Positions 9,798 to 41,107 of a stretch of 64,000 bases of DNA are shown here, in pieces. The DNA comes from Guillardia theta CCMP2712 (Eukaryota > Protista > Cryptophyta): NCBI RefSeq assembly GCF_000315625.1, contig NW_005434667.1:673061-737060 (forward strand). The letters run 5' to 3'. How positions within the stretch are numbered: the first letter of the stretch is position 1; each line of letters opens with the position of its first letter. The translations under genes and the position numbers were made by a program. Below the pieces are notes generated by a model. That model was not told the DNA's origin. It saw only the letters and a list, made by a program, of their open reading frames with translations, and searched no databases.

Positions 9798-10794
9798 CTA
9801 CAACGCAATCTTTGTTGATACCCTGGACGTGGTAAGCTCGCCCAGCAGAGGTTGCTCAAGATCCGATTTCCTCGGGGGATGCTCGATGGAGTACCTCAAC
9901 CTCTCCACATCAGAGGGGCTGATATGGTTCTTCCTGAACACCTTGTACCACATGCGCGTCCTCCGCTCCCTGGTCGCTGAGTTGCACTTTTTGATCGACT
10001 TGAGCCACTGCTCAACAAGCCGTTGCTTGAAGATCTGCAAAAACCACGGCAATCAACCCCAACACAAGGGTAAAGAACGACCCCTCCGCATCACCTCGTG
10101 CGAGATTTCCTGGCCGTATTCCCAGGCTAGCTGCACTGGTGTGCGTCCTTGCTGGGAAGCATGTCATGAAAGCGCACGGAAGGAGTTGGAAAGGATGGAC
10201 CTTGTCTTTCGCTGTCACTTTGAGCCCGCGCTTTAGAAGGTTGTGGATGGCGTTGCTGCTGCCGTTCACAGCTGCCCAGTGGAGGGCTGTGGCGCCATTC
10301 TTGTCGACGGCACTCACATTCGCTCCTCTCTCACAGAGAGCGTCAATAGCCGAGGAACGGTCGTTGACGGCAGCCCAAAAGATCGGGGTCCACCCATCGC
10401 TATCGGTCAACTCAGTTCCAAAGCGTTTGTCGTGTATTCGTTTGAGCTCGATCGCCTTGCCAGCAGCGGCTAAAGACATCATCAACTTGTAGTAGGCCTT
10501 TAGCTCCTTCTTCTGGAGATTGAATTTCAATCCTCCTCCACGAAGATGCATCACCCCGAGGGATGAGGATGGAGCGATGGAGGATTGTTGGATGCCAACG
10601 TGGCCGCGCGCAACACAGCACGATAGGACCACGGGCTGATCACAAACAAACTTCAGCGCGCAACCAACACGATCGAACTGACAAGCATGATCTGCGTCTG
10701 CCGCTGTCCTCGCACCGCATGAGAGCACGCTCCCAACTTTCTGCACCCCCCAAGTCGCGAACGCGACGACTAACCAGGGTAGCAGAGTTTTCAT
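9798..10794 (-). CDS. Ankyrin-repeat protein with signal peptide and HLRGG-ending presequence
   Basis: MKTLLPWLVVAFATWG N-terminus; ankyrin repeats DGWTPIFWAAVND, NGATALHWAAVNG and, after an intron, GRTPVQLAWEYG. Confidence 0.8.
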
Positions 10795-11353
10795 GTCCGC
10801 TCCAGCTTATCTGAGCATGGAGAAGCTCTTGCCAACAGTCTGCATGGCCTCTGCCGTCACTTCTGTCTGTCTCATCTTCTAGCTCTCCTCAGCTTCCTGC
10901 GCAGCCTTCTTCTGCATCTGCCGGCCGCTGGGGCACCTCCAATCCGACCATTGCTAGACCAGGGAACTTGAACCGCTCGTCGTTGAAAGTTTCAATAAAA
11001 ATATACGAAAGTTCTGGATATCAAAGTTTCAAAGTTTGTAATTCGTTACGGAGAATTCCGCGCGAGGAGAGGCAGGCATGGCGGAAGGGGAGCCGGGGGG
11101 GAGGGAAGTAGCACGAGATATGGCGGGAGAGGGGGGGGGGGGATGGTCAGAAGATAGAAGGAGGTAGGAGTGAGAAGAGGCCCAGCAACGGGGATGTGCG
11201 AGGACGCAAGTGTCTCGCTGGAAGAGCCATTGGTCGCCTCATGATTGTTGGACGAGCTCATTTCTGGATCGGCACCGGGTCTATGGAGGAGTCTTACGAT
11301 GTGCCTGCAGGTTTCAATGAGTTTTGCAGTCTGAAGGAAGCAGAAAACAGAAG

Positions 11354-13483
11354 ATGAGCGGGTCAGACGGGCAGAACAACTTCGTCAAGAAGCTCAACGA
11401 CCTCAATCCCTCCACCGTCTCAGTCCAGACGCTCTCGAAATGGTGAGGGCGACCCCTCAAGTGACGGGCCTGACCTGTCGATGCAAGGATGATCTTCAAC
11501 TACAAACATGCTGCGAACTTGGTGCGGACATGGCAGAGGGAGATCCTGCAAGTGAAGCCGGAAAGGTGAGTCAGAGAGCCTCGAGGGCACTCATTCTCCG
11601 CTAACGGCATTCTAGGAAGCTGACCTTTCTGTACCTGGCGAATGACGTGCTGCAGCAAGTGAGGAACATGACTGACGTTCCTTCTCTGAAGTTTGCTCGT
11701 GTCCTGTCAGAGCCGCAAGAAACACCAGGAGTTCTTGAACGAATTCGGTTGGACCCAGGGCCTTGAGAGCGTTAGTCCTGACCATTTCCCTTCAACCAGC
11801 CAAAGTCCTTCCAGGGGTCCTTGCAGATGTTGCGAAGAGCTGTGATTCGAATCCAAAGGTGCGTTTCTTCCTCTCCCTCCCTCCCTCTCCCTCCCTCCCT
11901 CCCTCTCCCTCCCTCCCTCTCCCCTCCCTCTCCCTCCCTCCCTCTCCCTCCCTCCCTCTCCCTCCCTCCCTCCCTTTCTCCCTCCCTCTCCCTCCCTCCC
12001 GCTCCCCCCCTCCCTCTCCCTCCCTCCCTCTCCCTCCCTCCCTCCCTCTCCCTCCCTCTCCCTCCCTCCCTCTCCCTCCCTCCCTCTCCCTCCTTCTCTC
12101 TGCATGATTGTCTTTCCCGGATTGAAAGTTTCGACAGGTGAAGGAATCGTCCGCGCGGCTCATCATGATCTGGTGCACCTGTATCTCCAGTGGTCAAGTT
12201 AGGTTCTGACATGGAATCTTTTGGAAGGGAGGAGCGAGACGTGTACAGCAAAGACTTCTTGCTCAAGTGCTCGGCTGCACTGGTAACACCTACCCTTGTG
12301 CCAAGATCTCGACTGTTCGTGAGTGGATCCGCAGAAAGGAGAGTTGGCTGTATCCAGCAAAGACACTGGCAGCACGCCCGACATCAAAGGTGCCTCCTGA
12401 CCTTCTCTTCCCCCCAAGGAGGCTGATGTGACTCGTGGCCATCGACGTCTGTAGAGAAGGCGGAGATCCTGGAGCCGGTCGCCAAGGTCTTAACTCCGAG
12501 GTCCTTGCTGGAGTTCTGACGGGGCCTCAGTTGAACGAGGTGCTCTTGCGGCATAAGAATCTGAGCATTCGGACGGACGACAGTCACTCGAAGATCGAGA
12601 ACCTGTTGTCTCCCCCCTTCCTCCTCCCACCAGCGCCTGACCTGTGCCTGCAGACCGCCGGAGATCTTTCAAGTGAACCCTGAGGAGACGACGACTTCAG
12701 ACGTCTCGTATAACATCGCTGTTTCTGCCAGCCAGGTGCCGTTTGCGAAGGAGAGACTCGCTCTCCCTGTCCCCCACCTCACGTTCTCCTGCTCATGAAG
12801 ATCTTCATCACCAACGTCTCGTTGATTGTCAGATCTCCTTCCCCTGTGGTTTCTCCACAGAAGATATCGTTTTCAATATCCTATTCAATCTCTGTCTCCC
12901 CCGACCCTTCTCCTCCCGCTCCCCTCCTGACTTATCCGAAGGTCTTGGAAACTGGTGTGGCAAATAGAGAGGAGTTCAAGAAGTTAACGACTCAGAGCAT
13001 CGAGATCCTTCGCGATCTCCTGAAGGATCAGGTGAGTCCACGAGGCGACCAGCTCCTCTGTGACGCTGCGGAAGATGGCGAAATTTCAGGAGAACGAAAA
13101 GTGGCTCACCGAGCATTCAGCGGTGAGCAGCAGGAGAAGGGAGAGGAGAGCGAGGGATGAGAGAGGTGGAGAGGAGGGAGGGGAGGAGACTCTGACCTCC
13201 CTCTAGGTTCTGGCGAGCCTGAAGCTGTACATGTCCAACATATCCAGCACAGCAGCGCCGGGCGGTGCAGGAGGAGGGGGAGGAGGCCGGCCTCCTCCTT
13301 TGGCTGACAGCGACGAGGACGAGCCGAGGTGCTGCCATTCTCCGCGTTCTGTTTCGCTCACCTGTCCACAGCCCGAAGAGGCCGAGAGGAGAAAACTGGG
13401 CAGGAGGAGAGGAGAGCGTGCAGGAGCAGCCGCCAACTGAGGTGCCCATGGCGGACACTGCAGGAGAGGACTATGAACCATAA
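11354..13483 (+). CDS. CID-domain protein (RPRD1/Rtt103-like, binds Pol II CTD)
   Basis: Spliced FVKKLNDLNPSTVSVQTLSKW-MIFNYKHAANLVRTW..KLTFLYLANDVLQQ-SRKK..WKERDVY. Many short introns; 3' exon structure approximate. Confidence 0.8.
11870..12100. repeat. Polypyrimidine (CCCT/CCCTCT)n intronic tract
   Basis: About 230 nt of almost pure C/T inside a CID-gene intron. Confidence 0.95.
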
Positions 13484-13616
13484 TAGCGGTTGGAGGAAGT
13501 GTGGAGGAGGAGGAGCGAGGAGGAGCGAGGAGGAGGAGGAGGAGGAGGAATTGGCTTATCACGACCCAACTTTAAAATTAAAGACACCCATGAGCTCAAG
13601 GTCAAGACCTTCCTCG

Positions 13617-15935
13617 TTAGTCTCCCAGCCCCGTCAGATTGCCCAGGATGTCCTTGACGGTCTCGAACAGCCCTCCTCCTCCGGAATCTCCTGCTCTTTC
13701 GGTTCAGTGCGGAACGAGGAGCAGGTACATCCCTCCTCACCTCCTTGATCCCCCTTCCACACCTCTGCGTCCTCCCCCCACACCTCCTCTCCTGCACGTC
13801 ATTCAGTCACGCACAGAGCTCGGACCCTCCCAAGAACCTTCTGGAACTCCCTGGTTGCCTCCTCCTTCACCAACACCACCGCCGAAGAAGCCGCCGGCCC
13901 CATCACCACCTCCCGATGTCGCGCCGCCCTGACTCGCTTCTGCTTCCTGAAGTCACGCAAGAGGAGGAGGAGGCAGAGGAGGAGGAGGGGAGGGGGATGG
14001 GGTGAGGAGGAGGAGGAGGAGGAGGTGAAGGAGGAGGAGGAGGAGGAGCTGCTGCAGGAAGCCATGGACTTGCTTGAGATCGACCCGAGGAGGAGGAGGA
14101 AACGGAGGGAGGCAACGACCTGCTGCACTCCCAGCTGCACCTGCCGCTGCGCCACCAGCCGCTCCTCCAGCCGCTTCTGCACCGTCTGCTCCTCCTCCTC
14201 CTCCGATGGGGATGAAGAAGGGGAAAGGGACGCCTCCTCCGCTGTGCCGGCTGAAGTAGTCGAAGTCGATGGAGACGGCGCATGCTAGGACCGTTGCCTT
14301 CTCCTCCACCTTGTCGCTCCCGTCAGTCTCTCCCTTGACGGAAACAAAGCCCTACCGTGAGCGCCCTTCCTATCACCGGGCGGGCAAGCAGGTCTCCTGG
14401 GCTCTGGGCTACCATAGGAGGACTCCACTGGGTTGTTCTCGTGTTGTGATCGACGTAGTACGTGCGACCCTGATTGCTGTCAGAACCAGCAGCAGCAAAC
14501 AATAACAGATTGCCGCTTCCTACTGATACTCCCCATCGCCCTCCTTCTCCTCCTCACTTTTGTCCTCCTCCCTCTTCCTTCTCCTTCCCTCTCCCCTTCT
14601 CTGCCTTCCCTTTGTCGTTTCCTCCATAGCGGGTAACCCAGCAGGAGGCTCACCTGAGGGTCTTGCTTCTCTTCCCATCCTGGAGGAAGCTGCGCTCGTT
14701 CTGATGTAGTGGACGGGTTCTTTGCTGTGGACTGGTACGTCATGCGAGCCCCTGCATGGCAGACCCATCAGCAACATCGCAGAGAGGAGGGGAGAAGAAT
14801 GGTCTGCTAAGCAGAAAGAAGCAGAGGGTTTGTGCAATGAGGATGGGGTTGGGGGGGGGCGGGTGCTGCAGAAAGGAATAGGAGAAGAAGGAGGAGAAGG
14901 AGATTACCAAAGTCATACAGCGGGCTAGCAGGGTCTAGATGAACGATGTACGTATGAGCATCGGTGAAGAGCGTCTGAACGATCGTGCTCAGTCCTGCAA
15001 AGTTCTTGTCGACGGCAGCGAGCGCCCTCCCCTCCTCGTCCTGCAGTATGAGAGCCAGGGAAGTCAGCGAGCATGTCGGGGGAGGGAGTATCTGACCTCC
15101 AGGGTGAACTCCCAGGAGAGGAGGGGAGCGTCGATCATGGCGAACTGAGCCTGGTTGCTGTAAAGGTTGTACTTGCGTCGCCACAGGTGCCAGTTCATGT
15201 GGACCTCCCCGATCTCGTTGAACTGCGCATCCTGGACTCGCAAGGAGCTGGAGACCCAGTAGAAGGGCCTGTTGATCCTGATCAAGATGTTACCGTGCGG
15301 GTCCATGATGGTGGCGGTGAAGGGACGGTGAGTTCGAGCAAGCTGCCGCACGACTGTCTTCCCCAGCGATGACTCCTGCATCGCAATGGTATCAGACGCC
15401 TCCTGCTCCTCCTGCTGCTGCTCCTGCCAACCTCTGCCATGTATCCGACGATTTGGCCCAGCCTGTTGTAGAGGGTGTAATGATTGGCCTGTTCGAAGCC
15501 AACAAGGATCGTCCCGAGCTCAAGCCTCCGCTGCACGGCAAGGTAGGGCTCACTGAGCAGCGACTCCAAGCATGCTCGAATCTACACGCGCTGGTGAGAC
15601 TCCTACCTCACAAGGGAAGAGACACGGGGAGGGTCAACCTGAGGTGGCGGAAGGTTGTTGAGAGGTACGATCTGCCCCGGAGCTGTCGCAGGAGGAGTAT
15701 TGTACGCCTGCTGCTGCTGGTATGCATCGGGGGAAGGAGTCTGGTGGGGAAGAGGAGGGGCATTGCTGTTCTTCGGTGCCGACAAACGATCCCAGTTCAC
15801 CCCAGACAACGCCCTGGAAGCGTTGTGTTGGAGGACCCGAGAAGGGAGCAGTACGGAAGAACGCTGAAGAGGACCTGCTCGAGAGCAAGCCTTCGCTGCT
15901 GTCTGCAACATCCGACAGGTCGCTGCCAACCGCAT
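13617..15935 (-). CDS. Phospholipid scramblase family protein (AIM25-like) with inserted WW domain
   Basis: Arg/Ser-rich mitochondrial-type N-terminus; VQRRLELGTILVGFEQANHY, RQLARTHRPF, GEVHMNWHLWRRKYNLY, IDAPLLSWEF, LFTDAHTY, AVSIDFDYFSRHS; WW domain [30 protein letters not shown]. Confidence 0.85.
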
Positions 15936-16455
15936 TGCTAGAACGAGAGGAACCGTGTGGCAAAGTGCAGTCTGATTTCTGTTTCTGCGCAGCAACCTCA
16001 AGCCTTGAACCTTCTATCGTCTCCTGTCCTCTCCTATCACCTCCTCTCCTGTCCCGTCGTCTCCTCTCCTCTCCTCTCCTCTCCTCTCCTCTCCTCTCCT
16101 CTCCTCTCCTCTCCTCTCTTCTCCTCCCCGCTTCCTGTCCTCGCTCCTCCAAGAGGGTTTGGTTTCGTCACCTTTCAATGAATTCTTTTGAGTTTCTTTT
16201 GGGTCATAGTGGGGATGTGGTCTAGGATTGAAGCGGGATGACGACGCAGGGGGCGCAGGAAGGGTCGGGCATGGCACAGGAGGGAGAGGGGCAGGGAGGG
16301 AGAAGGGAAGGAGGAGAGTGAGGACGAGGACGAGGAAGAGGACGAGGATGGGGAGGAGGAAGAGGAAGAGAAAGAGGACGAGGATGGGGAGGAGCAGGAA
16401 GAGAAGGACAAGTGCGAGGACAATAGCGAGAAGAGGATACATAGAGATTCCAACC

Positions 16456-18771
16456 ATGATGCAGTAAGAGAGCTGTCTCGTCCTCATAGGTTTCGATCAA
16501 CACAACATCTCCTTCCTCTCTGTGTGTCTAGCTGTGGCTCGCGACTGATGACGTTGCACTCTTTCTGCCAGATGATCGGATAAAGCCCGAGATTATCTCT
16601 TTTGCAATCTTGCCATGGTGAAGGAAGACCTGTCGGGAGGGATCACCCGAGTCAAGCAGCTGTTGAGGAGCGTCTCCAAGAGCTTTCCTGTCTTCAAGAC
16701 CTCCAAGAAAGATGTCAAGAGGACAGACATGCCGAGCGACGTCCAGGGGATGCTGCTCAAGTACCAGAGGAACAAGGAGACCCTGCAGGTCCTGGCGGAC
16801 AACCGGGTAGAGTTCAACAAGGCGGCAGACTCGATCACCAAGGTAGATGAAGCTGTTGTTGACTCGGTCAGGAAGCTAGGGGACAATGGCAGAGAACAGT
16901 TTGTGCAGTCGGCCGAAGATATCGTCGTGCTCTACAACGCCATCACAAGCATCCGCAGCAGGTCAAACGACAGCCTGCTGGACTTTCTGCTGGACGTCGG
17001 AAGGATGGATAGGAAGACCGTATCCCATCTGTCGTCAGAGATCTTGAAGCTCGAGAACGCCAGGGACGCCCTCGACAAGACGATCGCAAAGCAGGAGCAG
17101 TCCAAGGAGAGGGGGGGCTCCGCGGGGGAGAGTGCGGAGAAGTTTGAGAGGAGGCAGCAGAAGATCAAGGCGAGGAAGGCGGCGTACGAGGAGCAGATCA
17201 AGGCTCTCAGGAGTCAGTTGCCGACCGCGGAGCTGAAGCTGGAGTCGAACTTCCTGTCGTCGTTCCTCGCAGTTCTCAAGGAGCATCGGGAGATCTTTGC
17301 TGATGTCCTGCTTCTCCTCCAGAACCTCGACGGCGCCATTGAGAACTTGGAGAGGGTCTGCGAGGAGTCGGCCAGTGCGCTGAACGCAACCATGTCGGAG
17401 CAGGACAAGAGGATGGATTCGGAGGTACTGCAACGGTGCCGGCCCAAGATCATCGAGATTCTCTCGATGCCCGACTTCGCCGTCTCCAGCGCCCTCCTCG
17501 ATGTCCACTTCACCACGAGCTCGGAGCCGGACCTGGTCGCTGTTGCGTGTCCCCTCCTCCGGATCCTGGACGATCTCGACCTCTGCGTGCCCTTCATCAA
17601 GTTCATGATCAGCAACGAGCTGCCCAAGGGCTCGTCGGAGACGACGCTGTTCCAAGTGCCCTCCGTCGCCGGCAGCCTGTGCGATGCCGCGTGCCAGATG
17701 GTGGCTGAGGAGTACCTGCACATGACTCTACACCCTCTGATCGAACAGATCTGCAGCGGGGAGGCGGACTTCGAGGTCGACATGCAGCACATTACGGCAG
17801 ACGAATCGTATGAAGTCAACCTGGACAACCTAACCAAGGCGATCCAGTGGTTCTTCGATACGGTCATCATCTCCATCAGCGACGTCCCGCCACTGCTCCG
17901 GACGATCTCCACTCACATCTACAACATCCTCGGAGCGAGAAGAAGGTCTGAGGCGCAGAGGGCCGTCGGCTACTTCTTCCTGGGTAACTACATCTGCCCT
18001 GCCATCAGAGATCCCCTCCGCTTCTCCCTGACTACCCGGCACGTCGATGAGAGGTCGGCAAGGGCTCTCGCCGTCATAGGGTCGGCAATGCAGTTTGCTT
18101 TCTTCGGGGAGGGCGAGCTGAGCTTCCCTCCAACTGTGAAGGAGCTGTCGTTGCAGTACCACGATCGCCTCGTGGAGGTCGTCGACAACCTGGGAACAGT
18201 GAGCCCCTCTGCATCGGAGAGCAGCCTGGCAGAGGTCGAGATGGCTGTAGAGGAGGAGGAGGATATCCTCTCCCTCCGCTCCTTCATCGTTTCAAACCAT
18301 CGGGCCATCGCGACCGCGCTGGCTCAGAAGGGCTTCTCACAGCATCTGTCTGACCTTGCTCTGTGCGTTGACGGGGTCGCCCTGACGGAGGTGGAGCATG
18401 AGAAACGCCTGAAGCCAGGGAGCAACCAGCCTGAGGAGGAGGAGGAGGAGGAGGAGCCCAGTTCTTCCCTGTGGGAGGCTCCAACTGAGCAAGCCGAAAC
18501 TCCGCAAGTCGTCAAGGCAGTCCGCACCGACTACTTCGTTGACGACGCTGACTGCATGCCCGAGAGTGCGCCGGTGAGAATCGATGCAGCTCCAGAGTCT
18601 TCCTCCGTCATCTTCGAGCTCAAGAGGGTCGATGAGAACCCGCGGACTCCCCTCCAGCCAACTCCCAGTAATGGAGCAGAGCCGGCTGAGCCCCAGCCGC
18701 TCATCAGGCCTCGCAGGAGGTACACGAAGACCAAAGTGATCCCGTCGTCCCCTGCCCCTGAACAAGCAGAG

Positions 18772-18805
<34 letters not shown>

Positions 18806-21229: not shown

Positions 21230-21324
21230 CTTTTGGGAGAAGCTTGAAGATGTACAGTAAATGTTGACTACGTCGCCCTTGGGAGCAATCCGGTCATCGA
21301 CAAAATTTGTCAACACTGCGCGTG

Positions 21325-22321: not shown

Positions 22322-22421
22322 NNNNNNNNNNNNNNNNNNNNNNNNNNNNNNNNNNNNNNNNNNNNNNNNNNNNNNNNNNNNNNNNNNNNNNNNNNNNNNN
22401 NNNNNNNNNNNNNNNNNNNNN
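22322..22421. other. Assembly gap (100 N)
   Basis: Run of n. Confidence 1.
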
Positions 22422-24502: not shown

Positions 24503-25372
24503 ATGAGTGTCAGACAAGCTGTAAGGATGAGATCTCAGTTGATGCCTCCTCTCGTTCCAACTCTCCTGTCCTTTCTGTTCATTTTAGCGGCTGGCATCCA
24601 GGGCACGGCCCCTCTACCAGCGCTAGCAAGAGGCGCGCTCAGCAGCGCACAGTATCAGATATTCGTCCCATCTCCCCTGAGGCTGCAAGGAGGAAGAAGA
24701 TCCGAGAGCAGGAAGAGGAGGCCTGACGGCGAGAGGAGCGAGTCAGAATCGCGCAGGAGCGTTTCACCGTCTTCGAAGGAGGGAGAGCCGACGCGTTCGC
24801 CGAAGAGGAGCAAGGGGGATCCCAAGGACGGCAGGAAGATTAAGAAGCACATACCCTCTTCAGCCAAGAAGATCCACAACAGCCCTTTGCCCCTGGCCGA
24901 GGAGTCGACGGAGGAGGAGTCATCACAGGAGCAGCGGTCGGAGAGTCCAACCATGTCCCAGAGGACGGTTGAAGACCAGCAGAGCTTGCAAAGGAAGAAG
25001 AAGAAGGGGAATTCAAGCGAGGTATCTTCCTACAAGACCCCGTCGACAAAGAGGAAGAAGGCCTTTCACAAGACTCCCGACTCGGGGAGGTCAGTCCGGT
25101 TCAGCGAGTCACTGACGTCGGTCCACGAGTACCCGAGCAAGAAGCAGAAGTTCTGCACGCAGGAGGAGATCGAGCGAGCGTTCCAGGAGTCGATCGAGGA
25201 AGAGATGCTGTCAGAGCTGGAGGAGGAGCAGAAGCCGAAGGGCAAGGGGAGGGCAGCGCCAATGTGGGAGGAGTCGAGTAGCGAGACTAGAAAGCCCCCG
25301 AAGGATTCAGCGAGCATGATTGACAAGAAGGGGAGGAACAGAGACAAGTCGAAGAGGAAGGGCAAAGACTAG
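24503..25372 (+). CDS. Signal peptide + LRLQGG presequence + Lys/Ser/Glu-rich low-complexity protein
   Basis: Hydrophobic LVPTLLSFLFILAAGIQG, then PLRLQGG, then basic clusters (RKRR, RKKKK, KRKK) and RSVRF. Confidence 0.7.
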   Translation: MSVRQAVRMRSQLMPPLVPTLLSFLFILAAGIQGTAPLPALARGALSSAQYQIFVPSPLRLQGGRRSESRKRRPDGERSESESRRSVSPSSKEGEPTRSPKRSKGDPKDGRKIKKHIPSSAKKIHNSPLPLAEESTEEESSQEQRSESPTMSQRTVEDQQSLQRKKKKGNSSEVSSYKTPSTKRKKAFHKTPDSGRSVRFSESLTSVHEYPSKKQKFCTQEEIERAFQESIEEEMLSELEEEQKPKGKGRAAPMWEESSSETRKPPKDSASMIDKKGRNRDKSKRKGKD

Positions 25373-31852: not shown

Positions 31853-32262
31853 TCAAGGCCGTTTCAGAAAATCTGGTCGTGCTGGTAGAGACATGTAGCA
31901 CAATAGAATATTCATAGCAGCATTGACATCACGAGACTTGATACGGTTTTGAACACAATTGGTGGATCTGCACCATTTCAAACCCCGCACCACTGACACT
32001 TCGTCAGCAAGTATACCATTCTTGTTGATTTGTTTGCGTCTCAAATCATACAATTCTTGATGACATTGATTGCAACATTTTGTCGTTCTGTATTCATCAA
32101 CTGCCGTCACCTCGAAGAAGTTCTGACATCGCCTTTTGATCCATTTTACAGGCACTGACTTCTCTCCACGCCCAGTACAACCGAATGATGCATCACCGTA
32201 TGCAATTATTGGATTTTGATCTGTCCCATTACCTTTCATCTTCTTGAAGAAAGTGAAAATTG
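31664..32262 (-). mobile_element. 5'-truncated Fanzor-bearing CACTA/EnSpm-like element (right end only)
   Basis: The terminus reads CACTACGGGACCCCCCCGGTAGTC at 31664 on +. Inside lie a structured 3' region and a Fanzor ORF fragment, broken at a poly-C tract. No partner TIR found by eye. Confidence 0.7.
31853..32262 (-). pseudogene. Fanzor1/TnpB-like RuvC nuclease, C-terminal fragment
   Basis: IIAYGDASF, VDEYRTTKCCNQC (catalytic E and Zn finger), LKWCRSTNC, SRDVNAAMNIL (RuvC-III D); RuvC-I and REC/WED are missing. Confidence 0.9.
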
Positions 32263-32289
32263 CCCCCCCCCCCCCCCCCCCCCCCCCCC
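32263..32289. repeat. Poly-C/poly-G homopolymer (~27 nt)
   Basis: Homopolymer at the Fanzor truncation point. Confidence 0.95.
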
Positions 32290-32382
32290 TCCTCTCGTTC
32301 CCCCTCGTTCCTCCTGTGAATAACCATAGCAAACCCTCTCGCAACATCATACAGCAGCTCTTGGGTGAGTCCAGCCAAAACT

Positions 32383-33114
32383 ATGTCCGAAAACAAGCAA
32401 ATGCTTCCTTCCAATGCGCAGAACATTGAAAATGTTCGTAAGAAAACTTTGACTTCTGAGCAAGCGGTTGAGATCTTCGCTCAGAGGAACGTTGAGTCCG
32501 GTTTCATTTCTGTGGAGAGCAATTTTTTGTCGAAGAAGTATGGCGTAAGCGCTAAGACTGTGCGCGACATCTGGAACCGAAAGTCATGGACCGAAGTGAC
32601 AAGGCCGTTGTGGACGGCGAAAGGTAAAGAGCTTGAAGCGTCGAAGGTGCTCCAGCAGCTTGTGAACGAGAATGGAAAGGGCGCAGGCAGATGTGAAAGT
32701 GACAGCCAATCTGAGGAGTGGAATATCTTGTCTACAACATCAGCAGCTGTCGAGAGAAGTCAGTCACGCGAGCGCAGTGTGCTGTTCATAGAGAATCGAG
32801 CAAACACTGACGTGTTGTGCAAGCCTGCACGGGTAGCCGATACGCAACGGATGGTAACGGAGGAGCTGCTGTCGAAGAAGCGAGGGGCGGCTGAGGCGAC
32901 GAGCGATACACAGCAGGTAGAGAAGAGGCAGAAAGCGATGGAACACTTCTCAAAAGGTCCTGCTGTAAAGATGACGAATAGCTGTGGTGTGGCATCAGAG
33001 ATCTCAGCGCTCCTGCAGCTGCTGGTGCAACAGCAGAAGAAGATCATGGACCAGCAGCAGCAGATCTGGTACATTTTCGAGGGGCATGAGCGACGAACTT
33101 TGAAGATGCGTTGA
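32383..33114 (+). CDS. HTH-domain protein 2 (YGVSAKTVRDIW HTH; Gln-rich coiled C-terminus)
   Basis: Intronless ORF; KKTLTSEQAVEIFAQR..LSKKYGVSAKTVRDIWNRKSWTEVTRPLW. Confidence 0.8.
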   Translation: MSENKQMLPSNAQNIENVRKKTLTSEQAVEIFAQRNVESGFISVESNFLSKKYGVSAKTVRDIWNRKSWTEVTRPLWTAKGKELEASKVLQQLVNENGKGAGRCESDSQSEEWNILSTTSAAVERSQSRERSVLFIENRANTDVLCKPARVADTQRMVTEELLSKKRGAAEATSDTQQVEKRQKAMEHFSKGPAVKMTNSCGVASEISALLQLLVQQQKKIMDQQQQIWYIFEGHERRTLKMR

Positions 33115-33299
33115 ATCTCTCGTTGAGCTTCAGAACGCGCCTTCGGTGAGGCTGTTAGGAGGGATAAACGAGGGTGACTTTCGAATTGAAAGCTCTGTCT
33201 GGGTTCTTGACTTCGTGAAGCTATCTCATGAAGCACATGTCAACGGATGATCTTCAGTATTGGAAGAACCAAAACAAATGAGAAAGAAGAGCAGCTGAA

Positions 33300-33810
33300 C
33301 TTTCATCAGGAGTCCGGTCCCGGCAACTGAGTTCAACCCAGTCGGAACTTGATAAATGAAGAGTCTTTTGTGGATGAAGCGACTGATCATACAACGACTC
33401 CTGCGCCGGGTCGAGCCCGGGCTCGGTGGCCCTGGCAGAGGCCCCGGCCGGGTGACTCCGAGTGCGGCAGCTGAAGGCTGTCCGACTCAGTCATCACGGG
33501 CCCGGCCCCGGGTCGACCGACAGCCGCCGCGCTCACTGTGACTGAGCGGCGCACGTGCACTCTACCCCTCTTCTTCATAGCGAAAATGGGGGTGTACAAA
33601 CAAGAATGCTCTAATGGTTTACAAGGTGGGTGGAGAATAGGGAAAACGAGGGGTACTATGACATGGAAAGGTGAGTGGAAAGGGTACTTGGCAAGGATGT
33701 ATGGTCGGTGGGTGGGGTAGCACTGATAATCCCAATGATGAGGGGTATAATTGCAGTGTAAAGGTACCGTGGGGTACTTCTGGATAGGGTGAGGGTAGTC
33801 AAAACCCCTC
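33300..33810. repeat. GC-rich palindromic motif block followed by GGGGTR cluster
   Basis: cccggg/ggccc/ccgagt/actgagcggc motifs, then repeated ggggta[c/g/t]; similar blocks at 31140-31660, 38290-38400 and 43900-44400. Confidence 0.55.
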
Positions 33811-34618
33811 CCAGAGAGTTTGAGTCGCATCCTTCGGATGAACGAATTGACAAGAGTTCTAATTGTATTTTAATAAAGTTATATATTTTGAGAATGCTCT
33901 GTAATTATTACATAATAATTTACTCATCCAATGTTTTCATACAAAAAGAACATTTTATCAATATATATTGTACCATACATTTATTTTATACAAATACAAG
34001 ACGTTCCTGTATGGCAGCGATTTGTGCTAGGGGTATATAGGATCTGCACCGCAGGATACGGGTAGGGTGGTTGAAAGGGTCCTACACGTTCCACCGGTCG
34101 AACCGCAGAGCCGCATTGTTTGCACACCTTTTACCCTCCCGCATCCTCGTCCCATCGCCATCATCAGTACAGTCTCCTCCTCCTCCTCCTCCTCCTCATC
34201 TTTTGTCGCTCTCTCCACTTCGAACTTTGTTTCTACGAAATTCCTTCGCCTTGGTAGCCTGTGACTTGGTAGAGTGCAGAAGTGAATCGGAGGTATTCGC
34301 ATACTTTCGGTGTTTCGTTGTTGAGATTTGCTGAATCCCTTGTTGATTGGCAGAGAGGAGACGAAATCAGTTGGGGCTGTGGGGGCCGAATGAATTGAAC
34401 TTGGCCCCCGTGAAAAAGTCAATCTGGTAACACTTGAATGTGAAAAACTTGCCGCTTATCCTGACGTTGGATTTAAGTCAGTTTAAGTGCAAACTCCCAT
34501 GATCAGATTGTTGGAATTGTGACATTTTGAAGATCAATTGTTAATGAGAAAAGGACGAGAAAGAGCCAAGCGAGATGAATCCCTAACTCTGGAGCCATCC
34601 AGAGAAGCAAAGAAGAAG

Positions 34619-36373
34619 ATGATGAAAAGCTTCAAAGGTGTCAGCTTGACGACTCTAGTGTCGGTAGTAGTCAATGCCTGGATATTGCTGCTCGCCGTTG
34701 CTCGTCGGCGATCTATCGATCCTCCTGGACCTATCGGAGACCTTGATGTCAGAATCCATGCTAACGCGAGAATTCCGATGGATTTCCGGCGGGCATACAT
34801 GGTCTTCTACAAATCCCCTGCGCGCACAATCCCTGCAGCGGTCAAACTAAATTTGCGAGGAGGTTTTGAAGAAAACGATAAGCCAATTGAAAGCAGCAAG
34901 ACCTTGAAACAAGTTCGGTCTGCACAACTTTGTGACGAGGCATGGCAGATCCAAGGGGATGGGCAGGTTGAAGAGGCTGTCAGGCTCTTGAAGGAGGCAC
35001 TTGTGGAGGATCCCACAAACACTGAGGCCATTTCAAAGCTGGGAATGATCTATGAGTATGAGATGGAGGACTACAAAGTTGCCAACATGTTATACCAGAA
35101 GGGACTAAGTATACTTCCGAACAGCTCCACTCTACTTTATGATTATGCTGTATTCTTGCAAGAACGTTTGAAGGATATCGATGGTGCCGAGGAATACTAC
35201 AGGAGAGCCTTGAATCAAAATCCAACTGATCCCAACATCCTCAACAACTATGCGGTATTTTTGAAGGAGCGTCGTAATGATACATTGAGAGCGGATGCCA
35301 TTTTCCGACAATCAATCGAGGTTTCACCGAACTCTACCAGTACATTATGCAATTATGCCACGTTCCTTGAAAGCTCTTTCGGTAAATACGACGAAGCGGA
35401 AGAGGTCTTTCACATACATTATGCTCCATATTGTGCTTTGACCAAATGTCTTGCACAGATGTACAAAAGAGCTCTTGAGATAGAGCCAAATGATGCGTCG
35501 ACTCTGTACAATTTTGCGATCTTTTTGGAGGAAGTCCGAGGCGACATCGATGGTGCAGGTATTTTCCCTTTGTAAACTTCTTGAGTGTAACCCTTCCTGA
35601 CACTTTGTCATGACCATTCAGAAAACATGTATAGGAGAGTCCTTCAAATCGAACCAACGGATAGTGATGCTTTGAACAACCTTGCTTTGATCCTCCAAAA
35701 TTCGAGGGTTGGTTTCAATTTCCACATCGCTCTTATACCTTCTCACTTGGTTGCAGAGTGACTACAATGGAGCGAAGATACTGTTTGAACAGGCTCTGAG
35801 CGCATGTCCTGAGGACTTGTCTACTGTCAACAATTTGGTGATGCTCAGCCCAGAAAAGCGGGGTTGTGTTCTAACAGACAAGTAGGCCGTTCTTTATGAA
35901 GATTGCCTTAACCAACCCGAAGAGGCAGAAAAATGGTACAAGAGGGCCCTGCAGGTTCTTGAGAATTCAAGTCTAAGTCTCCAAACTGCGTTAGCTGATT
36001 ATGGTTTGTAGCTTGGACCAAATGATGTTACCACCCTATGTAATTATGGCGGTTTCCTCAACAATTTTGGTGACAAGGTGCGAATTTGCTTCTTGGACAA
36101 TGAACACTGACACATCGCTCACAGAACGGTGCTGAAGCCTTGTTCGATAAAGTATTTGCTAGTTTCTTGATTGCGATTGGCCGCATGTTTTATTCGTTGT
36201 GATAGGCTCGGTCGATTGATACGCTAATGGCGAATAGATTGATTGAAGCTCAGGTTGGCTTTACAGGTGGAAAAGCAGCATTGGTATTTACGAAATCACA
36301 GGAAAGCAAAGAAGGTGAAACGGATCTTTCGCCTAGCAACGCAACTGGTCCGAGGAAGATGATTAAGGCATAG
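34619..36373 (+). CDS. TPR/HAT-repeat protein with signal peptide and LNLRGG presequence
   Basis: LVSVVVNAWILLLAVA; repeats such as AEEYYRRALNQNPTDPNILNNYAVFL and YKRALEIEPNDASTLYNFAIFL; several short 3' introns. Confidence 0.85.
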
Positions 36374-38416
36374 AAGTTTGAATCGTGCCTGATTCACTTG
36401 GTGAGCTTGCTTCGAACAGGTGCCTTCTTCTAATGGCGAAAGCACAACCTACATCCCTTCGTGAATTAATCTCAACAAACTCTACAGCCTTCGTTTTTCC
36501 ATTGTAAAATCCTTTCTAGAGAATGTCAGACGCGAACATGTGATATATTGGATTCATAAAGAATTAGTTGTCAAAATTCTAGTTGGCCATCAATTCCAAA
36601 AATCAAAGGCGACGTGAGTGAAGGCATCAAGATATCTATTCAGTGATTTCCTGTACACCTTGATGGCCCTGCCATTCGGATGGTCGACCAGCCTGAGCAA
36701 CCTCAGAAGAAGAATGAGAATGAGTCGCTCAACCTGCCAACATGCTTGCTCGTCGATGTCATGATCATGCTCCTGGAGGCAGAATCACCACCTCACTCCC
36801 TCTTCGCAGTTTGTATCAATCACTGGTATCTGTTCAAACAGTCCAAGACTGGACAATTTCTTGATCCTTCAGCAAACTCAGGGGTGTTAGCTTGACAGTA
36901 GGGGAGACTCACGAGCTTTTCGTTGAGTTGCTCAGAGAAAATTCAAGGTCACCGACGCCCTCGCTGAACAGGATCAATCAGAACGACAGCCATCACCAGC
37001 AAGTCATCACCGCTGACGATCGGGAGCATCTAAGGAAGCGTCACTCATCTCATCATGGATCAACAAGAGGTGCTCACTTGCTCCCTCAAGCACGCTCAGG
37101 TCTTCATGGCTGTGTCTCCACTTGGACAGAGCTTCCATCCTCGCCAGCGCAGACTCTGTACAAGGTCGTCAAGTTCAACTCCTGATCAGTGTGCAATGGT
37201 GTATCGGGTTACCGGAGTCTACACCAGGCATAGTGTCGAAGATTGCTCGCAGAAACCCAGGGTCCCTCATAACATCTGTGTACTGGTGCCTGGGCCTTCA
37301 AGTCAGAACTCAACTAGATGAGGGCTGGTTACTACCTCTCCATGGCTATTGTCTGCTCAAAAAGAGTTTCTTCGGCCTTGGTAACGATCAGAGCATTCGA
37401 AATTTGAGACTTGAAACTTCACCGCCGAGAAGAAACCGGAAACGGCCGCACTAGTCTTCCGCGCAAGGTTCAAAATCCCTCGATCTGAGGGATTGAGATC
37501 AGCATGTCAGTAGCAGGGGCAGCATCATGCTACCTCCAATCCTGAACAAAACCTTGGAGGTCAAGACCAACAACTGGGAGGCAGCCGTGAACAGCAACAC
37601 CTATGAGACCATCATGAGCAGGGAGAAAACATGTTGGTATGAAGAGACCGGGAGCCAGAGGATCGAAGTGAATGTTAGCAGGAGGAAGCAGCCCGAAACA
37701 AAGCTAACAACCACTAGAGCGAGAGCGGTGCAGCCCCACAGGCTTTGCAGCCTAGGAACACCCGTCACGTCAGCAGACGTTGGGAAGCAAGTCGAACAAG
37801 ATGAGAGAGAAAACTTACAAGGATTGACGTAAGCGCGATACAAGATCTGCTATCGATGCCTGCACACAGAAGATGAATTGAGACTGAGGCAAACTCACCA
37901 TGACATCACCAGGAGCCTCGTGTACGGGTCGAGAGAGGAGCCAGGAAGGACAAAGCTGCTCATTGCCGCCCATGTCCTCACCCCATCGCCTTCATCAGCT
38001 GCTTCATCCCATCGCTCGTATCACCTGCATCATTGTCTTCGTCATCCATCATCCAACATGTCTTGTCCACCTCATCCTATCCACTTCATGAAACAACTAT
38101 CATCTCATCGTTACGCCTATGATGTCCCGCAAGCACTGTCCCTCTTCATCCTCACTTCATCCTGCCCAAACTGCTCTTGCGATCCTGTCCTGTGACTTTC
38201 TTCACGATCCCATCTCTCCCTGCTCCGCCCTCGTAAGGGAAACTCCCTACTGAGCACTTCTCAGTTAGGAGTTTCCCTATCAACGTGCCGGATCGCCGGG
38301 CCCCGGGCCTGGACCGTACGGTCGTTGAAGTTCCGAGTTCGATCGGTGGCCACTGAGCGGCTAGACTGGCACCACCAAACAGTGTCGTGTGAAACGCTGC
38401 GAGCTGCTCCTTGAGC

Positions 38417-38590
38417 TGTTGGGTGGACAACCACTAGATTGTTGGGTGGACAACCACGACATTGCCAAGTTGGGTGGACAAACACTGCTAGTAGATTGTT
38501 GGGTGGACAACCACTATATTGTTAACCACTAGATTGTTGGGTGGACAACCACTAGATTGTTGGGTGGACAACCGTACCACTAGATTGTCA
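38417..38590. repeat. 23-bp minisatellite (TAGATTGTTGGGTGGACAACCAC), ~6 degenerate copies
   Basis: Directly visible tandem copies. Confidence 0.9.
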
Positions 38591-38712
38591 GGCAGGGAGG
38601 AGGTGATAATGTGGCAGCGATAATTTGGCAGCCTGCTCACTGCATAAAGCAGGGCCCAGCAGATCTAACACCGTGAGCCTCAGTTGTAAGAAGAGAGCTT
38701 GTACGAACTGAA

Positions 38713-41107
38713 TCAGTCTTCACCCCCGTCAAGGCTACCCTCCTCTTGCTCCTCCCCGCTCTCTCCGGCTCCAGCGGAGGAGCTTCGAGCACTGATTTGA
38801 CTTGGAGGACGGGAATCTTCCTGCACGTCGGCCTGGCTTGGCAAGGGCTCACTAACCAACATGTCCTGGTCCTCGCCCTCCTCGTTCTTCTTGACGTTCT
38901 TGTCAACTGCAGCTGGGGTCTCCTCCACAGTCTCCACTGCCATGGCCATTTTCTTCCGCAGAAATCTCTGATCTATCTGCATCAACCTTCTCTTCTTCTG
39001 GTTCCAGTCAGGGGGAGGAAGAATCAGCCCCAGCTCGGTCTCGACATCAATAAGGAGCTGTTTGAGCGCAATAGTGTTCTTGACAGAGTAGTCCCCGAAG
39101 CCGTATCGATCGAGCGCATCGATAAGGTCGTCCTTATTCATCGCATTGATCTTCTTCCTCCTCAGCAAGGAGCTCGTCTGCGACGTGGCGCCGCTCTGCT
39201 CAATCCCCAGCGCTGCCTTTTCCTTGGGGGAGAGGTCTGAAAGCAGCCGCATCCCTTCCTCTGCATGGCTCTCCAACTGCGGAGGCTTGACGTCCTCTCC
39301 CACCATGAACTGAGCATATTTCTCCTTGTCCCGCAGATACGGGGGCAGCTGCTCATACCTTGTTTTGGTGGCGATTCCGACGGGATACTCAGTCTGATTG
39401 AAGTCGAAGGGTCTCAAAAGGCCCGAGGAGCACAAGAACATCTTCTTCATCTCCTCCGCCAGCTTCTGCGGCTCAGTCTGGGCCCTACTGTGGAAGTTCC
39501 TTAGGGCCTTGGACCAGTGGGGGGGCAGGGTCTGCTCAGATCTTTTCGACTTCTCCTTCAAGATAAAGTTGTTATATATCCCTTCCGCCATGTCCTCGAT
39601 GTCCATGGTCTCCCTGTCATTGGCAAGGATCCTGGAGTCCAGCCCTTTGATTCCCAGCTTCACAATCTGATCGCTCTCGTTCTTCAACCAACCCCGTTCT
39701 GGGTCATACATAAATCCGTAATCGTGACAGCACTGGAGCTCGTGCTCGATAGCTTCTGCGCACCTTCCAAACTCCGATTCACAGAACCAGCAAACCCAAG
39801 GCGTGGGGTTATCAGTCCCTGGCCCCCAGGGCAGCTCGTTGACAATGGTGTGATTCCCGACTCCGACGACGCATCGCTGGGTCTTGTTGAAGTTCAAGTT
39901 AGGAATTCCCCTATCCGAACGTTCCTCCTCCTCCTTCTGGTCTTCCAATTCCTCCTTGAGATTTTCTTGCTGGATGGCCTCGTGCAGTTTCATCAGCTGC
40001 TCCATTTCCCTCGGGCAAGTCTTGAGGTACTCGAGATCGTCCTGCGCCAGTCGCTCAGCTTCGTCGAAGCCTTTGTCTTTGACTCGAGAGAAGAAACTAT
40101 AGCACGCAGGTCTTCCTGCGATTATCGCGAGGCTGAAAGCACTGTCCCTCTCGTCGTCTTCCTTGTAGATCATCTTCACGTGCTCGGATGGTTTGATACC
40201 GTTGGGATGTTTGAACATAGCGATGATCACCGCAAGATGCCCAAAGAAAGCTGCCCAATGTAACGGCGTCCTCTTATACTCATCAACGGCATAACAATCC
40301 AGGTTCAGGTCAAGAAGCAGCTCCACCACTTCAGTGTGGCCCTGGCAAGCGGCTTCGTGAAGCAAAGTCATCTCATTTGCTGCACAAACCAACAGAAATG
40401 TCACAAAGAGCGAAAGTTTGTTGCAAGGCTCTTAATCACTAACCATCGCGCTGGTGAACGTTGGCTCCCAGCTGAATCAGCTTTGCAATGAAGTCTTGGT
40501 GACCATCCTCCACGTACCTGCACAGCAGGTAGTCGAGCTGAGCTTGATGCCCTCTCGCTTGATCGCAGTGATAGGCAAGGAGAGAAAGTCCAGGGAACGC
40601 TGTTTCATTGATCCCCGACCTCATCGCTGTGGTGACATTAATCCTCCTCCCCGTCAGGTCCTTGTACAGGAGCATCGTCCTCGTCGTCAGGTGGATCTTC
40701 CCTCGCAGTGGGCACGTGGCACAGTAAGGGGGCTCGCATCCACAGCGCGAGATCACGTCCTCCCTCGTGTCTCCCGGACGCCCGAAGCGCTTCAACGCCA
40801 TGTTCACCTTGGCGCAACTGGACATACCAGAAATGGCGTAGGTAGGAAATACACCCTGCTGCCACTTGTCTGCTGTGCGATTGTACACGAGATAATCCGG
40901 CGGGTGCTCTACCCGGTACCTCCTCAGGGGCCTCGTTAGCTGGACCAAGTCGTCGTCAGAGAGATACTCTTGCTCCTCCCTGGCTCCTCCGCGCAGGCAC
41001 AGGCCTCGACATCGCGCATGAGGATGCTGGTGTGAGTGAGGATCCGTCGATCCGCCCCATGGGAGAGCCCTGACGAGCAGCAGGACGAGGATTGAAACTC
41101 GAGACAT
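38713..41107 (-). CDS. Signal peptide + LCLRGG presequence; ankyrin repeats, C2HC Zn finger and SAP/HeH-like motif
   Basis: MSRVSILVLLLVRALPWG; NEMTLLHEAACQGH, YKRTPLHWAAFFGH; WVCWFCESEFGRCAEAIEHELQC; INAMNKDDLIDALDRYG; intron near 40440-40385. Confidence 0.75.

What the first reader, a model, noticed from the sequence alone, without database searches (positions are those of the whole stretch)
10534..41002. Ubiquitin C-terminus mimic (LxLRGG) closes the presequence of four unrelated signal-peptide proteins: candidate DUB-cleaved periplastid targeting signal
Seen: ankyrin protein MHLRGG (10548-10534), K/S-rich protein LRLQGG (24677-24694), TPR protein LNLRGG (34847-34864) and ankyrin/ZnF protein LCLRGG (41002-40985). 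Each motif lies ~40-80 aa from the start, after a hydrophobic signal and a basic linker and just before the mature region. None shows an obvious Phe right after the signal. The two clear stromal proteins here (EngB SAFC-F, DnaJ SVA-F) have the Phe and lack LRGG. Known: ubiquitin ends LRLRGG and deubiquitinases cut after GG; cryptophyte stromal presequences have +1 Phe whereas periplastid (PPC) ones do not; import across the second membrane uses ERAD-derived SELMA with ubiquitin enzymes. Inference: the motif is a maturation site cut by a PPC deubiquitinase and marks host proteins sent to the PPC/nucleomorph. I cannot confirm whether this has been published.
Basis: partly seen in the sequence, partly recalled or inferred. 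Interest (0 to 1): 0.85.

Follow-up and report, generated by a model that had tools for sequence, protein, structure and literature searches.

The report
Ubiquitin-tail motif closing periplastid import leaders
In the alga Guillardia theta, proteins sent into the relic cytoplasm around its chloroplast carry an entry tag that ends in the same six residues as ubiquitin's tail (L-x-L-R-G-G); this tag ending is conserved across cryptophytes, seems not to have been described, and probably marks where the tag is cut off.

Summary
All four motifs are in frame, 36 to 82 residues behind a signal-peptide-like start, in ORFs that continue into ankyrin, TPR or K/S-rich regions. The real unit is a hexapeptide, [LM]-x-[LMI]-[RKQ]-G-G. 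In the window it occurs four times in six frames, each time in one of these leaders.

It is not chance. In 264 kb, 5 of 40 L[RQ]GG sites follow a signal peptide, against 0 of 269 for all permutations. Genome-wide, Leu at P6 of LRGG is about 100 copies over in-frame shifted controls.

It tracks the periplastid compartment (PPC). Four G. theta starch synthases carry it, and cryptophyte starch is made in the PPC. Homologues from Hemiselmis, Cryptomonas, Teleaulax and Hanusia keep it inside leaders that are otherwise unconserved. Charge and conservation both switch at the motif.

Cleavage after GG by a ubiquitin-tail-reading protease is plausible but untested. Cryptophytes lack the ptDUP clade. 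One USP gene has an LLSLRGG site 1.26 kb upstream.

I found no publication describing this. The scan's first readers flagged the same motif in more than 20 other windows of this genome.

Verdict: a real, conserved new variant of the bipartite PPC leader. The mechanism is inferred.

The parts
10534..10794 (-). W1 leader: signal peptide, 65-aa spacer, then MHLRGG (10551-10534)
   Evidence: In the Hanusia phi orthologue P0117 the leader is 33% identical and the mature part 83%, with GVM[HN]LRGG conserved. AF2 pLDDT is below 50 for residues 1-92.
10198..10533 (-). W1 mature exon: ankyrin repeats. The ORF beyond about residue 199 is probably intron read-through.
   Evidence: Pfam Ank_2 E=2.1e-13. 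The orthologue alignment ends at residue 199.
24503..24694 (+). W2 leader: signal peptide, spacer, then LRLQGG (24677-24694). Q replaces R at P3.
24695..25372 (+). W2 mature part: K/S/E/R-rich, probably disordered, nuclear-type protein
   Evidence: Translation. No Pfam family found.
34619..34864 (+). W3 leader: hydrophobic segment, 50-aa spacer, then LNLRGG (34847-34864). An in-frame Met at 34544 would add 25 charged residues.
   Evidence: KLNLRGGFEEN is conserved in Hanusia phi P0106 and in the transcript-like contig P0105.
34865..35575 (+). W3 mature part: TPR repeats
   Evidence: Pfam TPR_17 E=9.8e-27. The confident AF2 fold starts at about residue 96.
40985..41107 (-). W4 leader: signal peptide, 17-aa spacer, then LCLRGG (41002-40985)
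   Evidence: The site is listed genome-wide as C7:714046-714062(-). Six distant homologues carry RL[RHQL]LRGG.
38713..40984 (-). W4 mature part: a conserved Cys-rich N-terminal domain (exon 1), then ankyrin repeats in the next ORF
41458..41562 (+). Comparison gene: stromal-type leader SAFC|F without the motif (EngB-like GTPase)
44609..44689 (+). Comparison gene: stromal-type leader SVA|F without the motif (DnaJ protein)
22322..22421 (.). Assembly gap. It is not part of any of the four genes.

Best explanation
The window is nuclear DNA of the cryptophyte Guillardia theta. The four sites are instances of a cryptophyte-wide leader element.

Host-encoded proteins bound for the periplastid compartment (PPC, the relic red-algal cytoplasm that holds the nucleomorph) carry three things in order:
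- an ER signal peptide;
- a net-positive transit-peptide-like spacer of about 17-70 residues without Phe at +1;
- the hexapeptide [LM]-x-[LMI]-[RKQ]-G-G, which copies ubiquitin's L71-R-L-R-G-G76.

The hexapeptide sits at the leader/mature junction. My reading is that the SELMA (ERAD-derived, ubiquitin-dependent) translocon carries the preprotein into the PPC. A PPC-resident cysteine protease that reads ubiquitin tails (USP-like or LXGG-type) then cuts after GG and releases the mature protein.

Shown: the motif exists, is non-random, is linked to signal peptides and to PPC marker enzymes, is conserved across genera, and sits at the junction.
Inferred: cleavage after GG and the class of enzyme.

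My odds: PPC-leader element about 0.85; it is a cleavage site about 0.6; the protease is DUB-type about 0.4.
For: 1. Organism. The genome is 87,145,349 bp in 669 contigs, and hits are named GUITHDRAFT.

2. Non-random, and tied to signal peptides.
- 5 of 40 L[RQ]GG sites follow a signal peptide, against 0 of 269 for permutations.
- All nine G. theta leaders I read (eight from DNA, plus the database protein P0037) have L or M at P6.
- In the window, the hexapeptide occurs only in the four leaders.

3. Genome-wide counts around the core CTNCGNGGNGG.
- With CTN at P6 there are 430 sites.
- With CTN shifted to P7 or P8 there are 342 and 314. Reversed controls give 314, 309 and 321.
- Real ubiquitin units number about 13, and none is among the first 100 listed sites.

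4. PPC link.
- All three starch-synthase genes whose N-termini I could read have signal peptide, spacer and [NS]LRGG. In L022 the motif lies 10 aa before the catalytic-domain start, KLQIVFVSAEIAPW.
- A fourth G. theta paralogue, P0037, has LRLRGG.
- Established knowledge, not tested here: cryptophyte starch is made in the PPC.

5. Conservation.
- Starch-synthase homologues from Hemiselmis, Cryptomonas, Teleaulax and others keep [LM]x[LMI][RK]GG in leaders that are otherwise unconserved. Leaderless homologues ranked below them (one named Symbiodinium, P0057) have neither a leader nor the motif.
- W1 against Hanusia phi: 33% identity before the motif and 83% after it.
- Six distant W4 homologues keep the motif.

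6. Junction behaviour.
- The spacer has 103 K/R and 38 D/E in 806 aa. The 25 residues after GG have 62 K/R and 102 D/E in 575 aa.
- P1' is never Pro in 23 sequences.
- Confident AF2 folds begin 6-14 residues after GG.

7. Context from the literature.
- The ptDUP clade is absent from Cryptophyta, and an alternative enzyme is postulated (10.1101/2025.03.31.646294).
- The only accepted PPC/stroma discriminator is the +1 Phe, scored in a 25-residue window that would miss a motif at variable distance (PMC12136025).

8. Candidate enzyme. An LLSLRGG-coding site at C13:4900-4919(+) lies 1.26 kb upstream, on the same strand, of a USP-domain match.
Against:
- Most DUBs need the ubiquitin fold. The leaders contain none and are only 17-70 unconserved residues long.
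- W2 has Q at P3, and other leaders have K, I, M or W at motif positions.
- The Hanusia phi orthologue of W4 (66% identical) and a Baffinella homologue have a signal peptide but no motif.
- W3 may start at an upstream Met, which would make its hydrophobic segment a signal anchor.
- The only unselected genome sample (200 kb) gave one clear leader and one possible leader.
- The broad DNA pattern YTN..YTN-MGN-GGN-GG shows no excess over its reversed control (1601 against 1679).
- Signal peptides were called by a hydrophobicity rule, not by a trained predictor.
Confidence: 0.6

Rival explanations
1. The motif is a PPC leader element that is bound rather than cut. It would work as a sorting or retention signal read by a ubiquitin-tail-binding factor of the SELMA/Cdc48 machinery. 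Its role would be to keep the protein in the PPC or release it from the translocon. The leader would be removed elsewhere or kept.
For: The same association and conservation data apply. In several homologues a long acidic stretch separates GG from the first conserved domain, so cutting at GG is not required to free the domain.
Against: The charge switch and conservation switch fall exactly at GG. In starch synthase L022 the catalytic domain starts 10 residues after GG. Known ubiquitin receptors bind the fold, not the tail (established knowledge).
Confidence: 0.15
2. The motif is the cleavage site of a PPC presequence peptidase unrelated to deubiquitinases, for example an M16 or other metallo- or serine protease. 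The likeness to ubiquitin's tail would be convergent or coincidental.
For: The leaders have no ubiquitin fold. P3 tolerates Q and K, and P4 tolerates M and I. The PPC transit peptidase is unknown in every lineage.
Against: The six-residue match covers both Leu positions, which DUB clefts read. Many leaders are exactly LRLRGG. The PPC import route is ubiquitin-dependent. Cleavage after Gly-Gly is typical of Ub/UBL and LXGG cysteine proteases (established knowledge).
Confidence: 0.2
3. The motif is a pro-peptide or sorting signal of the general secretory pathway (ER, vacuole, ejectisome, cell surface), not of the PPC.
For: All carriers start with a signal peptide. PPC residence of the four window proteins was not tested.
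Against: The carriers are cytosolic-type proteins (ankyrin, TPR) and four starch synthases, whose product lies in the PPC. The clearly secretory 3016-aa EGF-repeat protein in the window lacks the motif.
Confidence: 0.04
4. Chance or compositional artefact: G-rich, R-rich coding sequence throws up LRGG often enough to be picked out by eye.
For: Thirteen other L[RQ]GG sites occur in the window's six frames. The bare core shows no genome-wide DNA excess (3865 against 3959).
Against: Permutation controls give 0 of 269. P6 is L or M in 9 of 9 leaders. There is an in-frame P6 excess genome-wide. The motif alone is conserved across genera.
Confidence: 0.01

Closest known systems
Bipartite targeting signals of complex red plastids (signal peptide plus transit-peptide-like region; +1 Phe for stroma, none for PPC; Gould et al. 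2006; ASAFind 2.0, PMC12136025)
   Same: Signal peptide first, then a net-positive spacer. The PPC class lacks Phe at +1. Import presumably goes through SELMA.
   Different: A positive, conserved hexapeptide at the far end of the spacer has not been described, as far as I could find. Published logos are aligned on the signal-peptide cut and span 25 residues, so they would miss it.
Ubiquitin and UBL precursors processed by deubiquitinases (polyubiquitin, Ub-ribosomal fusions, NEDD8, ISG15: ...L-R-L-R-G-G followed by the cut)
   Same: The same six-residue tail. The residue after GG is variable and non-Pro. The compartment has its own ubiquitin system.
   Different: There is no ubiquitin fold in front of the tail (Pfam negative). 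The 'leaving group' is the whole mature protein and the 'ubiquitin side' is a disordered leader.
Viral LXGG and (M/I/L)XGG proteases that double as DUBs (coronavirus PLpro, adenovirus protease)
   Same: They recognise a short linear L-x-G-G site in an unfolded polyprotein and cut after GG. This shows that a tail-only site can be enough.
   Different: These are viral enzymes. No homologue was identified here. The leader motif also conserves P6.
Short linear export motifs behind a signal peptide (Plasmodium PEXEL RxLxE/Q/D, Toxoplasma TEXEL, oomycete RxLR)
   Same: The architecture matches: signal peptide, a variable spacer of tens of residues, then a short motif that is cleaved and/or decides the destination. 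The motif occurs on many unrelated proteins.
   Different: The sequence differs, the protease differs (aspartic plasmepsin V/ASP5) and the destination differs (host cell).
ptDUP, the proposed PPC deubiquitinase of diatoms (Hempel et al. 2010; phylogeny in 10.1101/2025.03.31.646294)
   Same: A PPC-resident USP-type enzyme acting on imported preproteins.
   Different: Its clade is absent from cryptophytes. It is thought to remove ubiquitin from Lys residues, not to cut leaders.
Bacterial double-glycine leader peptides cut by C39 peptidase domains
   Same: The leader ends in GG and a papain-like cysteine protease cuts after it during export.
   Different: These are bacterial, with no signal peptide and a different upstream consensus.

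Membership tests
Cryptophyte PPC-type bipartite leader | N-terminal ER signal peptide | tested here: met
   In all four there is a Met, then 0-3 basic residues, then a 10-residue window of mean Kyte-Doolittle hydropathy 2.4-2.9. This is a heuristic, not SignalP. W3 may be a signal anchor if the upstream Met is used.
Cryptophyte PPC-type bipartite leader | No aromatic residue at +1 of the transit-peptide-like region | tested here: met
   The plausible cuts are AFA|T or TWG|V, IQG|T, AVA|R and WGG|S. The two stromal-type genes in the window show C|F and A|F. The cut sites are inferred by eye.
Cryptophyte PPC-type bipartite leader | Transit-peptide-like spacer, net positive | tested here: met
   Over 23 leaders there are 103 K/R against 38 D/E in 806 aa. 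It is weak for W1 (+5/-4) and W2 (+1/0).
Cryptophyte PPC-type bipartite leader | The protein resides in the PPC or nucleomorph | not testable with these tools
   Only indirect: the same leader type is on four starch synthases, whose pathway is periplastidial by established knowledge.
Deubiquitinase substrate (ubiquitin/UBL C-terminal tail) | L-R-G-G at P4-P1, with Leu at P6 | tested here: met
   9 of 9 G. theta leaders have [LM]-x-L-[RQ]-G-G. Many homologues are exactly LRLRGG.
Deubiquitinase substrate (ubiquitin/UBL C-terminal tail) | Beta-grasp ubiquitin fold preceding the tail | tested here: not met
   None of the four proteins has a ubiquitin-family Pfam hit at E<=0.01. The spacers are 17-70 unconserved residues with AF2 pLDDT below 50.
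Deubiquitinase substrate (ubiquitin/UBL C-terminal tail) | Peptide bond after GG is hydrolysed in vivo | not testable with these tools
Deubiquitinase substrate (ubiquitin/UBL C-terminal tail) | A DUB is present in the same compartment | tested here: inconclusive
   There are 47 USP-domain matches in the genome. One, at C13:6182-7975(+), has an LLSLRGG-coding site 1.26 kb upstream on the same strand.

The most novel reading that the evidence does not exclude
Cryptophytes mature their periplastid proteome with a ubiquitin-tail code. Several hundred host-encoded proteins would end their import leader in (L/M)xLRGG. A PPC deubiquitinase-type protease, replacing the missing ptDUP, would cut there, so that SELMA's ubiquitin cycle and leader removal become one step. 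The cut would expose any chosen N-terminal residue, as in ubiquitin-fusion processing. The motif alone would then predict the PPC/nucleomorph proteome.
Probability: 0.35. Interest if true: 0.9.

Novelty: new variant of a known kind. Interest (0 to 1): 0.8.

Why it matters
How proteins are told to stop in the periplastid compartment, and what removes their leaders there, are open questions. The only accepted rule is negative (no Phe at +1), and PPC prediction recovers about a quarter of known cases (PMC12136025).

A conserved positive motif would do three things:
- It would give a simple, testable predictor of the cryptophyte PPC and nucleomorph proteome.
- It would name a concrete cleavage site for N-terminomics and mutagenesis.
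- It would point to a ubiquitin-tail-specific protease as the missing PPC maturation enzyme, in a lineage that lacks ptDUP. That ties leader removal to the ubiquitin-driven SELMA translocon.

Tried and rejected
- **Wider genome sampling.** I therefore could not read LHC, aaRS or USP loci and could not do a proteome-wide test. I did not use pattern output to read further letters.
- **Broad DNA pattern.** YTNNNNYTNMGNGGNGG gave 1601 against 1679 for the reversed control, so no excess. The reversed control is unreliable for purine-rich patterns, because the genome holds many GGAGAG-type repeats. I relied on in-frame shifted controls instead.
- **Bare LRGG core.** 3865 against 3959, no excess.
- **The look-up of encoding contigs for W2.** Nothing on record, because records of the window's own genome are left out.
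- **W3 homologue search.** Only close relatives appeared. The more distant TPR hits are unrelated proteins without the motif.
- **EngB identity by Pfam.** Negative on the long ORFs, but confirmed by motifs in small exons.
- **Ubiquitin genes as the source of the DNA excess.** Rejected. There are about 13 canonical units, none among the first 100 listed sites.
- **Literature.** No paper pairs LRGG with Guillardia, cryptophytes or (peri)plastids in this sense. The one hit is a passing remark on an LRGGG in Omp85 homologues (PMC2222254). Curtis et al. 2012 and Gould et al. 2006 are not held, so prior mention there cannot be excluded.
Full report
**What is there**

All four motifs are present, in frame, at the stated coordinates.

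| Gene | Strand | Start Met | Motif | Coordinates | Residues |
|---|---|---|---|---|---|
| W1 | - | 10794 | MHLRGG | 10551-10534 | 82-87 |
| W2 | + | 24503 | LRLQGG | 24677-24694 | 59-64 |
| W3 | + | 34619 | LNLRGG | 34847-34864 | 77-82 |
| W4 | - | 41107 | LCLRGG | 41002-40985 | 36-41 |

- Each ORF opens with a short n-region and a 10-residue window of mean hydropathy 2.4-2.9.
- Each continues for 177-240 codons after the motif.
- Pfam finds ankyrin repeats after W1, and TPR repeats after W3. It finds ankyrin repeats in the ORF that follows W4's first exon, and nothing in the K/S/E-rich W2.
- None of the four has Phe at a plausible +1 of the signal-peptide cut.
The 41458 ORF reads ...SDSAFC|F and has EngB-type motifs in later small exons. 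The 44609 ORF reads ...DSVA|F and has a DnaJ domain. Neither has the motif.
- The assembly gap at 22322-22421 lies in a purine-rich spacer. No long frame crosses it, and it is 2.08 kb from the nearest leader gene.

**Is it chance?**

- The window has 17 L[RQ]GG sites in six frames.
- Only the four leader sites have Leu or Met two residues upstream. So the real unit is a hexapeptide, [LM]-x-L-[RQ]-G-G, which copies ubiquitin's L71-R-L-R-G-G76.
- I added 200 kb of unselected sequence from contig 1. In the 264 kb together, 5 of 40 L[RQ]GG sites lie 15-120 residues behind a signal-peptide-like Met with at least 60 open codons after.
- All eleven permutations of the same residues give 0 of 269. The background rate for GG dipeptides is 63 of 4286.
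- The unselected 200 kb gave one clear leader (...SMDVSRLSLRGG|SSDLDDE). It also gave one possible leader whose start is hidden by a gap.

**Genome-wide DNA counts**

| Pattern around the core CTNCGNGGNGG | Count | Reversed control |
|---|---|---|
| Bare core | 3865 | 3959 |
| In-frame CTN codon at P6 | 430 | 314 |
| CTN shifted to P7 | 342 | 309 |
| CTN shifted to P8 | 314 | 321 |
| Broad pattern YTNNNNYTNMGNGGNGG | 1601 | 1679 |

- The P6 count is about 100 copies above the shifted controls.
- Real ubiquitin units number about 13, and none is among the first 100 listed sites.
- The broad degenerate pattern shows no excess. I attribute this to purine-rich simple repeats inflating the reversed control, but it is a caveat.
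- Only one of the eight leaders I read at DNA level uses the counted codon class. The excess therefore extrapolates, very roughly, to several hundred leaders.

**What it goes with**

- The genome is Guillardia theta CCMP2712: 87,145,349 bp in 669 contigs, with hits named GUITHDRAFT.
- By established knowledge, cryptophytes make starch in the periplastid compartment (PPC). I therefore used starch synthases as PPC markers.
- All three starch-synthase genes with readable N-termini have the same leader type:
  - ...GRTLNLRGG|TETT
  - ...RMRRLSLRGG|NDG
  - ...EDLRMSLRGG|AGSDAIVPDQKLQIVFVSAEIAPW, where the catalytic domain begins ten residues after GG.
- A fourth paralogue, P0037, has SPLRLRGG.

**Conservation across cryptophytes**

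- Starch-synthase homologues from Hemiselmis (STLHLRGG), Cryptomonas (RTLGLRGG), Teleaulax (GAMRLRGG) and unnamed transcriptomes keep [LM]x[LMI][RK]GG at the end of leaders that are otherwise unalignable. Leaderless homologues ranked below them (one named Symbiodinium, P0057) have no leader and no motif.
- W1's Hanusia phi orthologue is 33% identical over the leader and 83% over the mature part, with GVM[HN]LRGG at the boundary.
- W3's Hanusia orthologue keeps KLNLRGGFEEN.
- Six distant homologues of W4 have RL[RHQL]LRGG behind a signal peptide.
- There are counter-examples. The Hanusia phi orthologue of W4 (66% identical) and a Baffinella homologue have a signal peptide but no motif.

**Junction behaviour**

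- Over 23 leaders, the spacer between the hydrophobic core and the motif has 103 K/R and 38 D/E in 806 residues.
- The 25 residues after GG have 62 K/R and 102 D/E in 575 residues.
- The residue after GG is S, G, A, F, T, M, R, N or E, and never Pro.
- AlphaFold models give pLDDT below 50 up to residue 92 in both W1 and W3. Confident ankyrin or TPR folds start 6-14 residues after GG. These models rest on shallow alignments and are weak support.

**Mechanism**

- The data show a leader element that marks PPC-type proteins and sits at the leader/mature junction.
- Cleavage after GG, and a ubiquitin-tail-reading protease as the enzyme, are inferences.
- In favour:
  - the six-residue identity to the part of ubiquitin that lies in DUB active-site clefts;
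  - the ubiquitin dependence of SELMA;
  - the existence of proteases that cut linear LXGG sites (viral PLpro, adenain; established knowledge);
  - the report that the ptDUP clade is missing from cryptophytes, so another enzyme must exist (10.1101/2025.03.31.646294).
- Against:
  - the leaders have no ubiquitin fold;
  - P3 can be Q or K;
  - I have no cleavage data.
- One lead rests on coordinates only. An LLSLRGG-coding site at C13:4900-4919(+) lies 1.26 kb upstream, on the same strand, of a USP-domain match at C13:6182-7975. I estimate the chance of such a coincidence at about 0.5% per gene. I could not read the sequence.

**Novelty**

- Full-text searches pairing LRGG with Guillardia, cryptophyte, nucleomorph or (peri)plastid found nothing relevant.
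- A 2017 review centred on periplastid targeting (PMC5756292) contains no LRGG.
- ASAFind 2.0 (2025) still names the missing +1 Phe as the clearest difference between the two leader types. It scores only 25 residues around the signal-peptide cut, so a motif at variable distance would be invisible to such logos.
- Subscription papers (Gould 2006, Curtis 2012) are not held, so an earlier mention cannot be excluded.
- The scan's first readers noted the same leader in more than 20 other windows of this genome. The carriers they name include an importin, eL22, LSm, AspRS, a nucleoporin, RIO1, SBDS, MBF1 and Rpn13. I did not verify these, but they fit a PPC/nucleomorph proteome.

**Limits**

- Signal peptides were called by a hydropathy rule.
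- PPC residence of the four window proteins is inferred, not shown.

Noticed in passing
window 41160-41300: The roughly 350-bp spacer between the divergent genes W4 (start 41107, minus) and the EngB-like gene (start 41458, plus) is almost entirely purine-rich microsatellite, (CAGGAGG)n then (GGAGAGG)n. The reads tool's filter tripped on 41218-41290.
   Followed up: no
window 34544-34618: An in-frame Met 25 codons upstream of the W3 start adds a highly charged extension (MRKGRERAKRDESLTLEPSREAKKK). Transcript-derived orthologues P0105 and P0106 start there. The hydrophobic segment may therefore be a signal anchor rather than a cleaved signal peptide.
   Followed up: partly
P0162 (Hanusia phi) against window 40985-41107: The closest orthologue of W4 keeps the signal peptide and the mature domain, but its spacer reads ...SLPKVLLQDEGPVEQ with no GG motif. 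This could be a lineage-specific loss or retargeting.
   Followed up: partly
G000:C1:263852 (+) and C1:264775 (-) (L007): A second possible leader end (...GPRLELLRMNLRGG) lies about 0.9 kb from the verified C1 leader and points the other way. Its start is hidden by an assembly gap. It may be a divergent pair of LRGG-leader genes.
   Followed up: no
G000:C13:4900-4919 (+) and C13:6182-7975 (+): An LLSLRGG-coding site lies 1.26 kb upstream, on the same strand, of a USP deubiquitinase domain match. This is a candidate PPC-targeted USP. Only the coordinates are known.
   Followed up: partly
window 54829-63879 (-): A 3016-aa single-ORF protein with a signal peptide and Cys-rich EGF/tenascin-like repeats. 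It is a secretory-type protein without the motif.
   Followed up: no
window 35390-35450 (+), W3 residues about 262-282: The window ORF and P0105 carry about 20 extra in-frame residues (VFHIHYAPYCALTKCLAQMY) that are absent from the Hanusia orthologue. This is probably a short in-frame intron read through.
   Followed up: no
P0027-P0029 (Hemiselmis starch synthases): Their leaders end in STLHLRGG or SSLYLRGG. This recalls ubiquitin's longer C-terminal strand STLHLVLRLRGG and hints that the element may descend from a ubiquitin gene fragment.
   Followed up: no
G000:C11:985221-987023 (+): A tandem array of about 14 copies, with a period of about 126 bp, of a unit containing CTCGGTCCCCTCCGAGGAGG. 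It inflates one control count.
   Followed up: no
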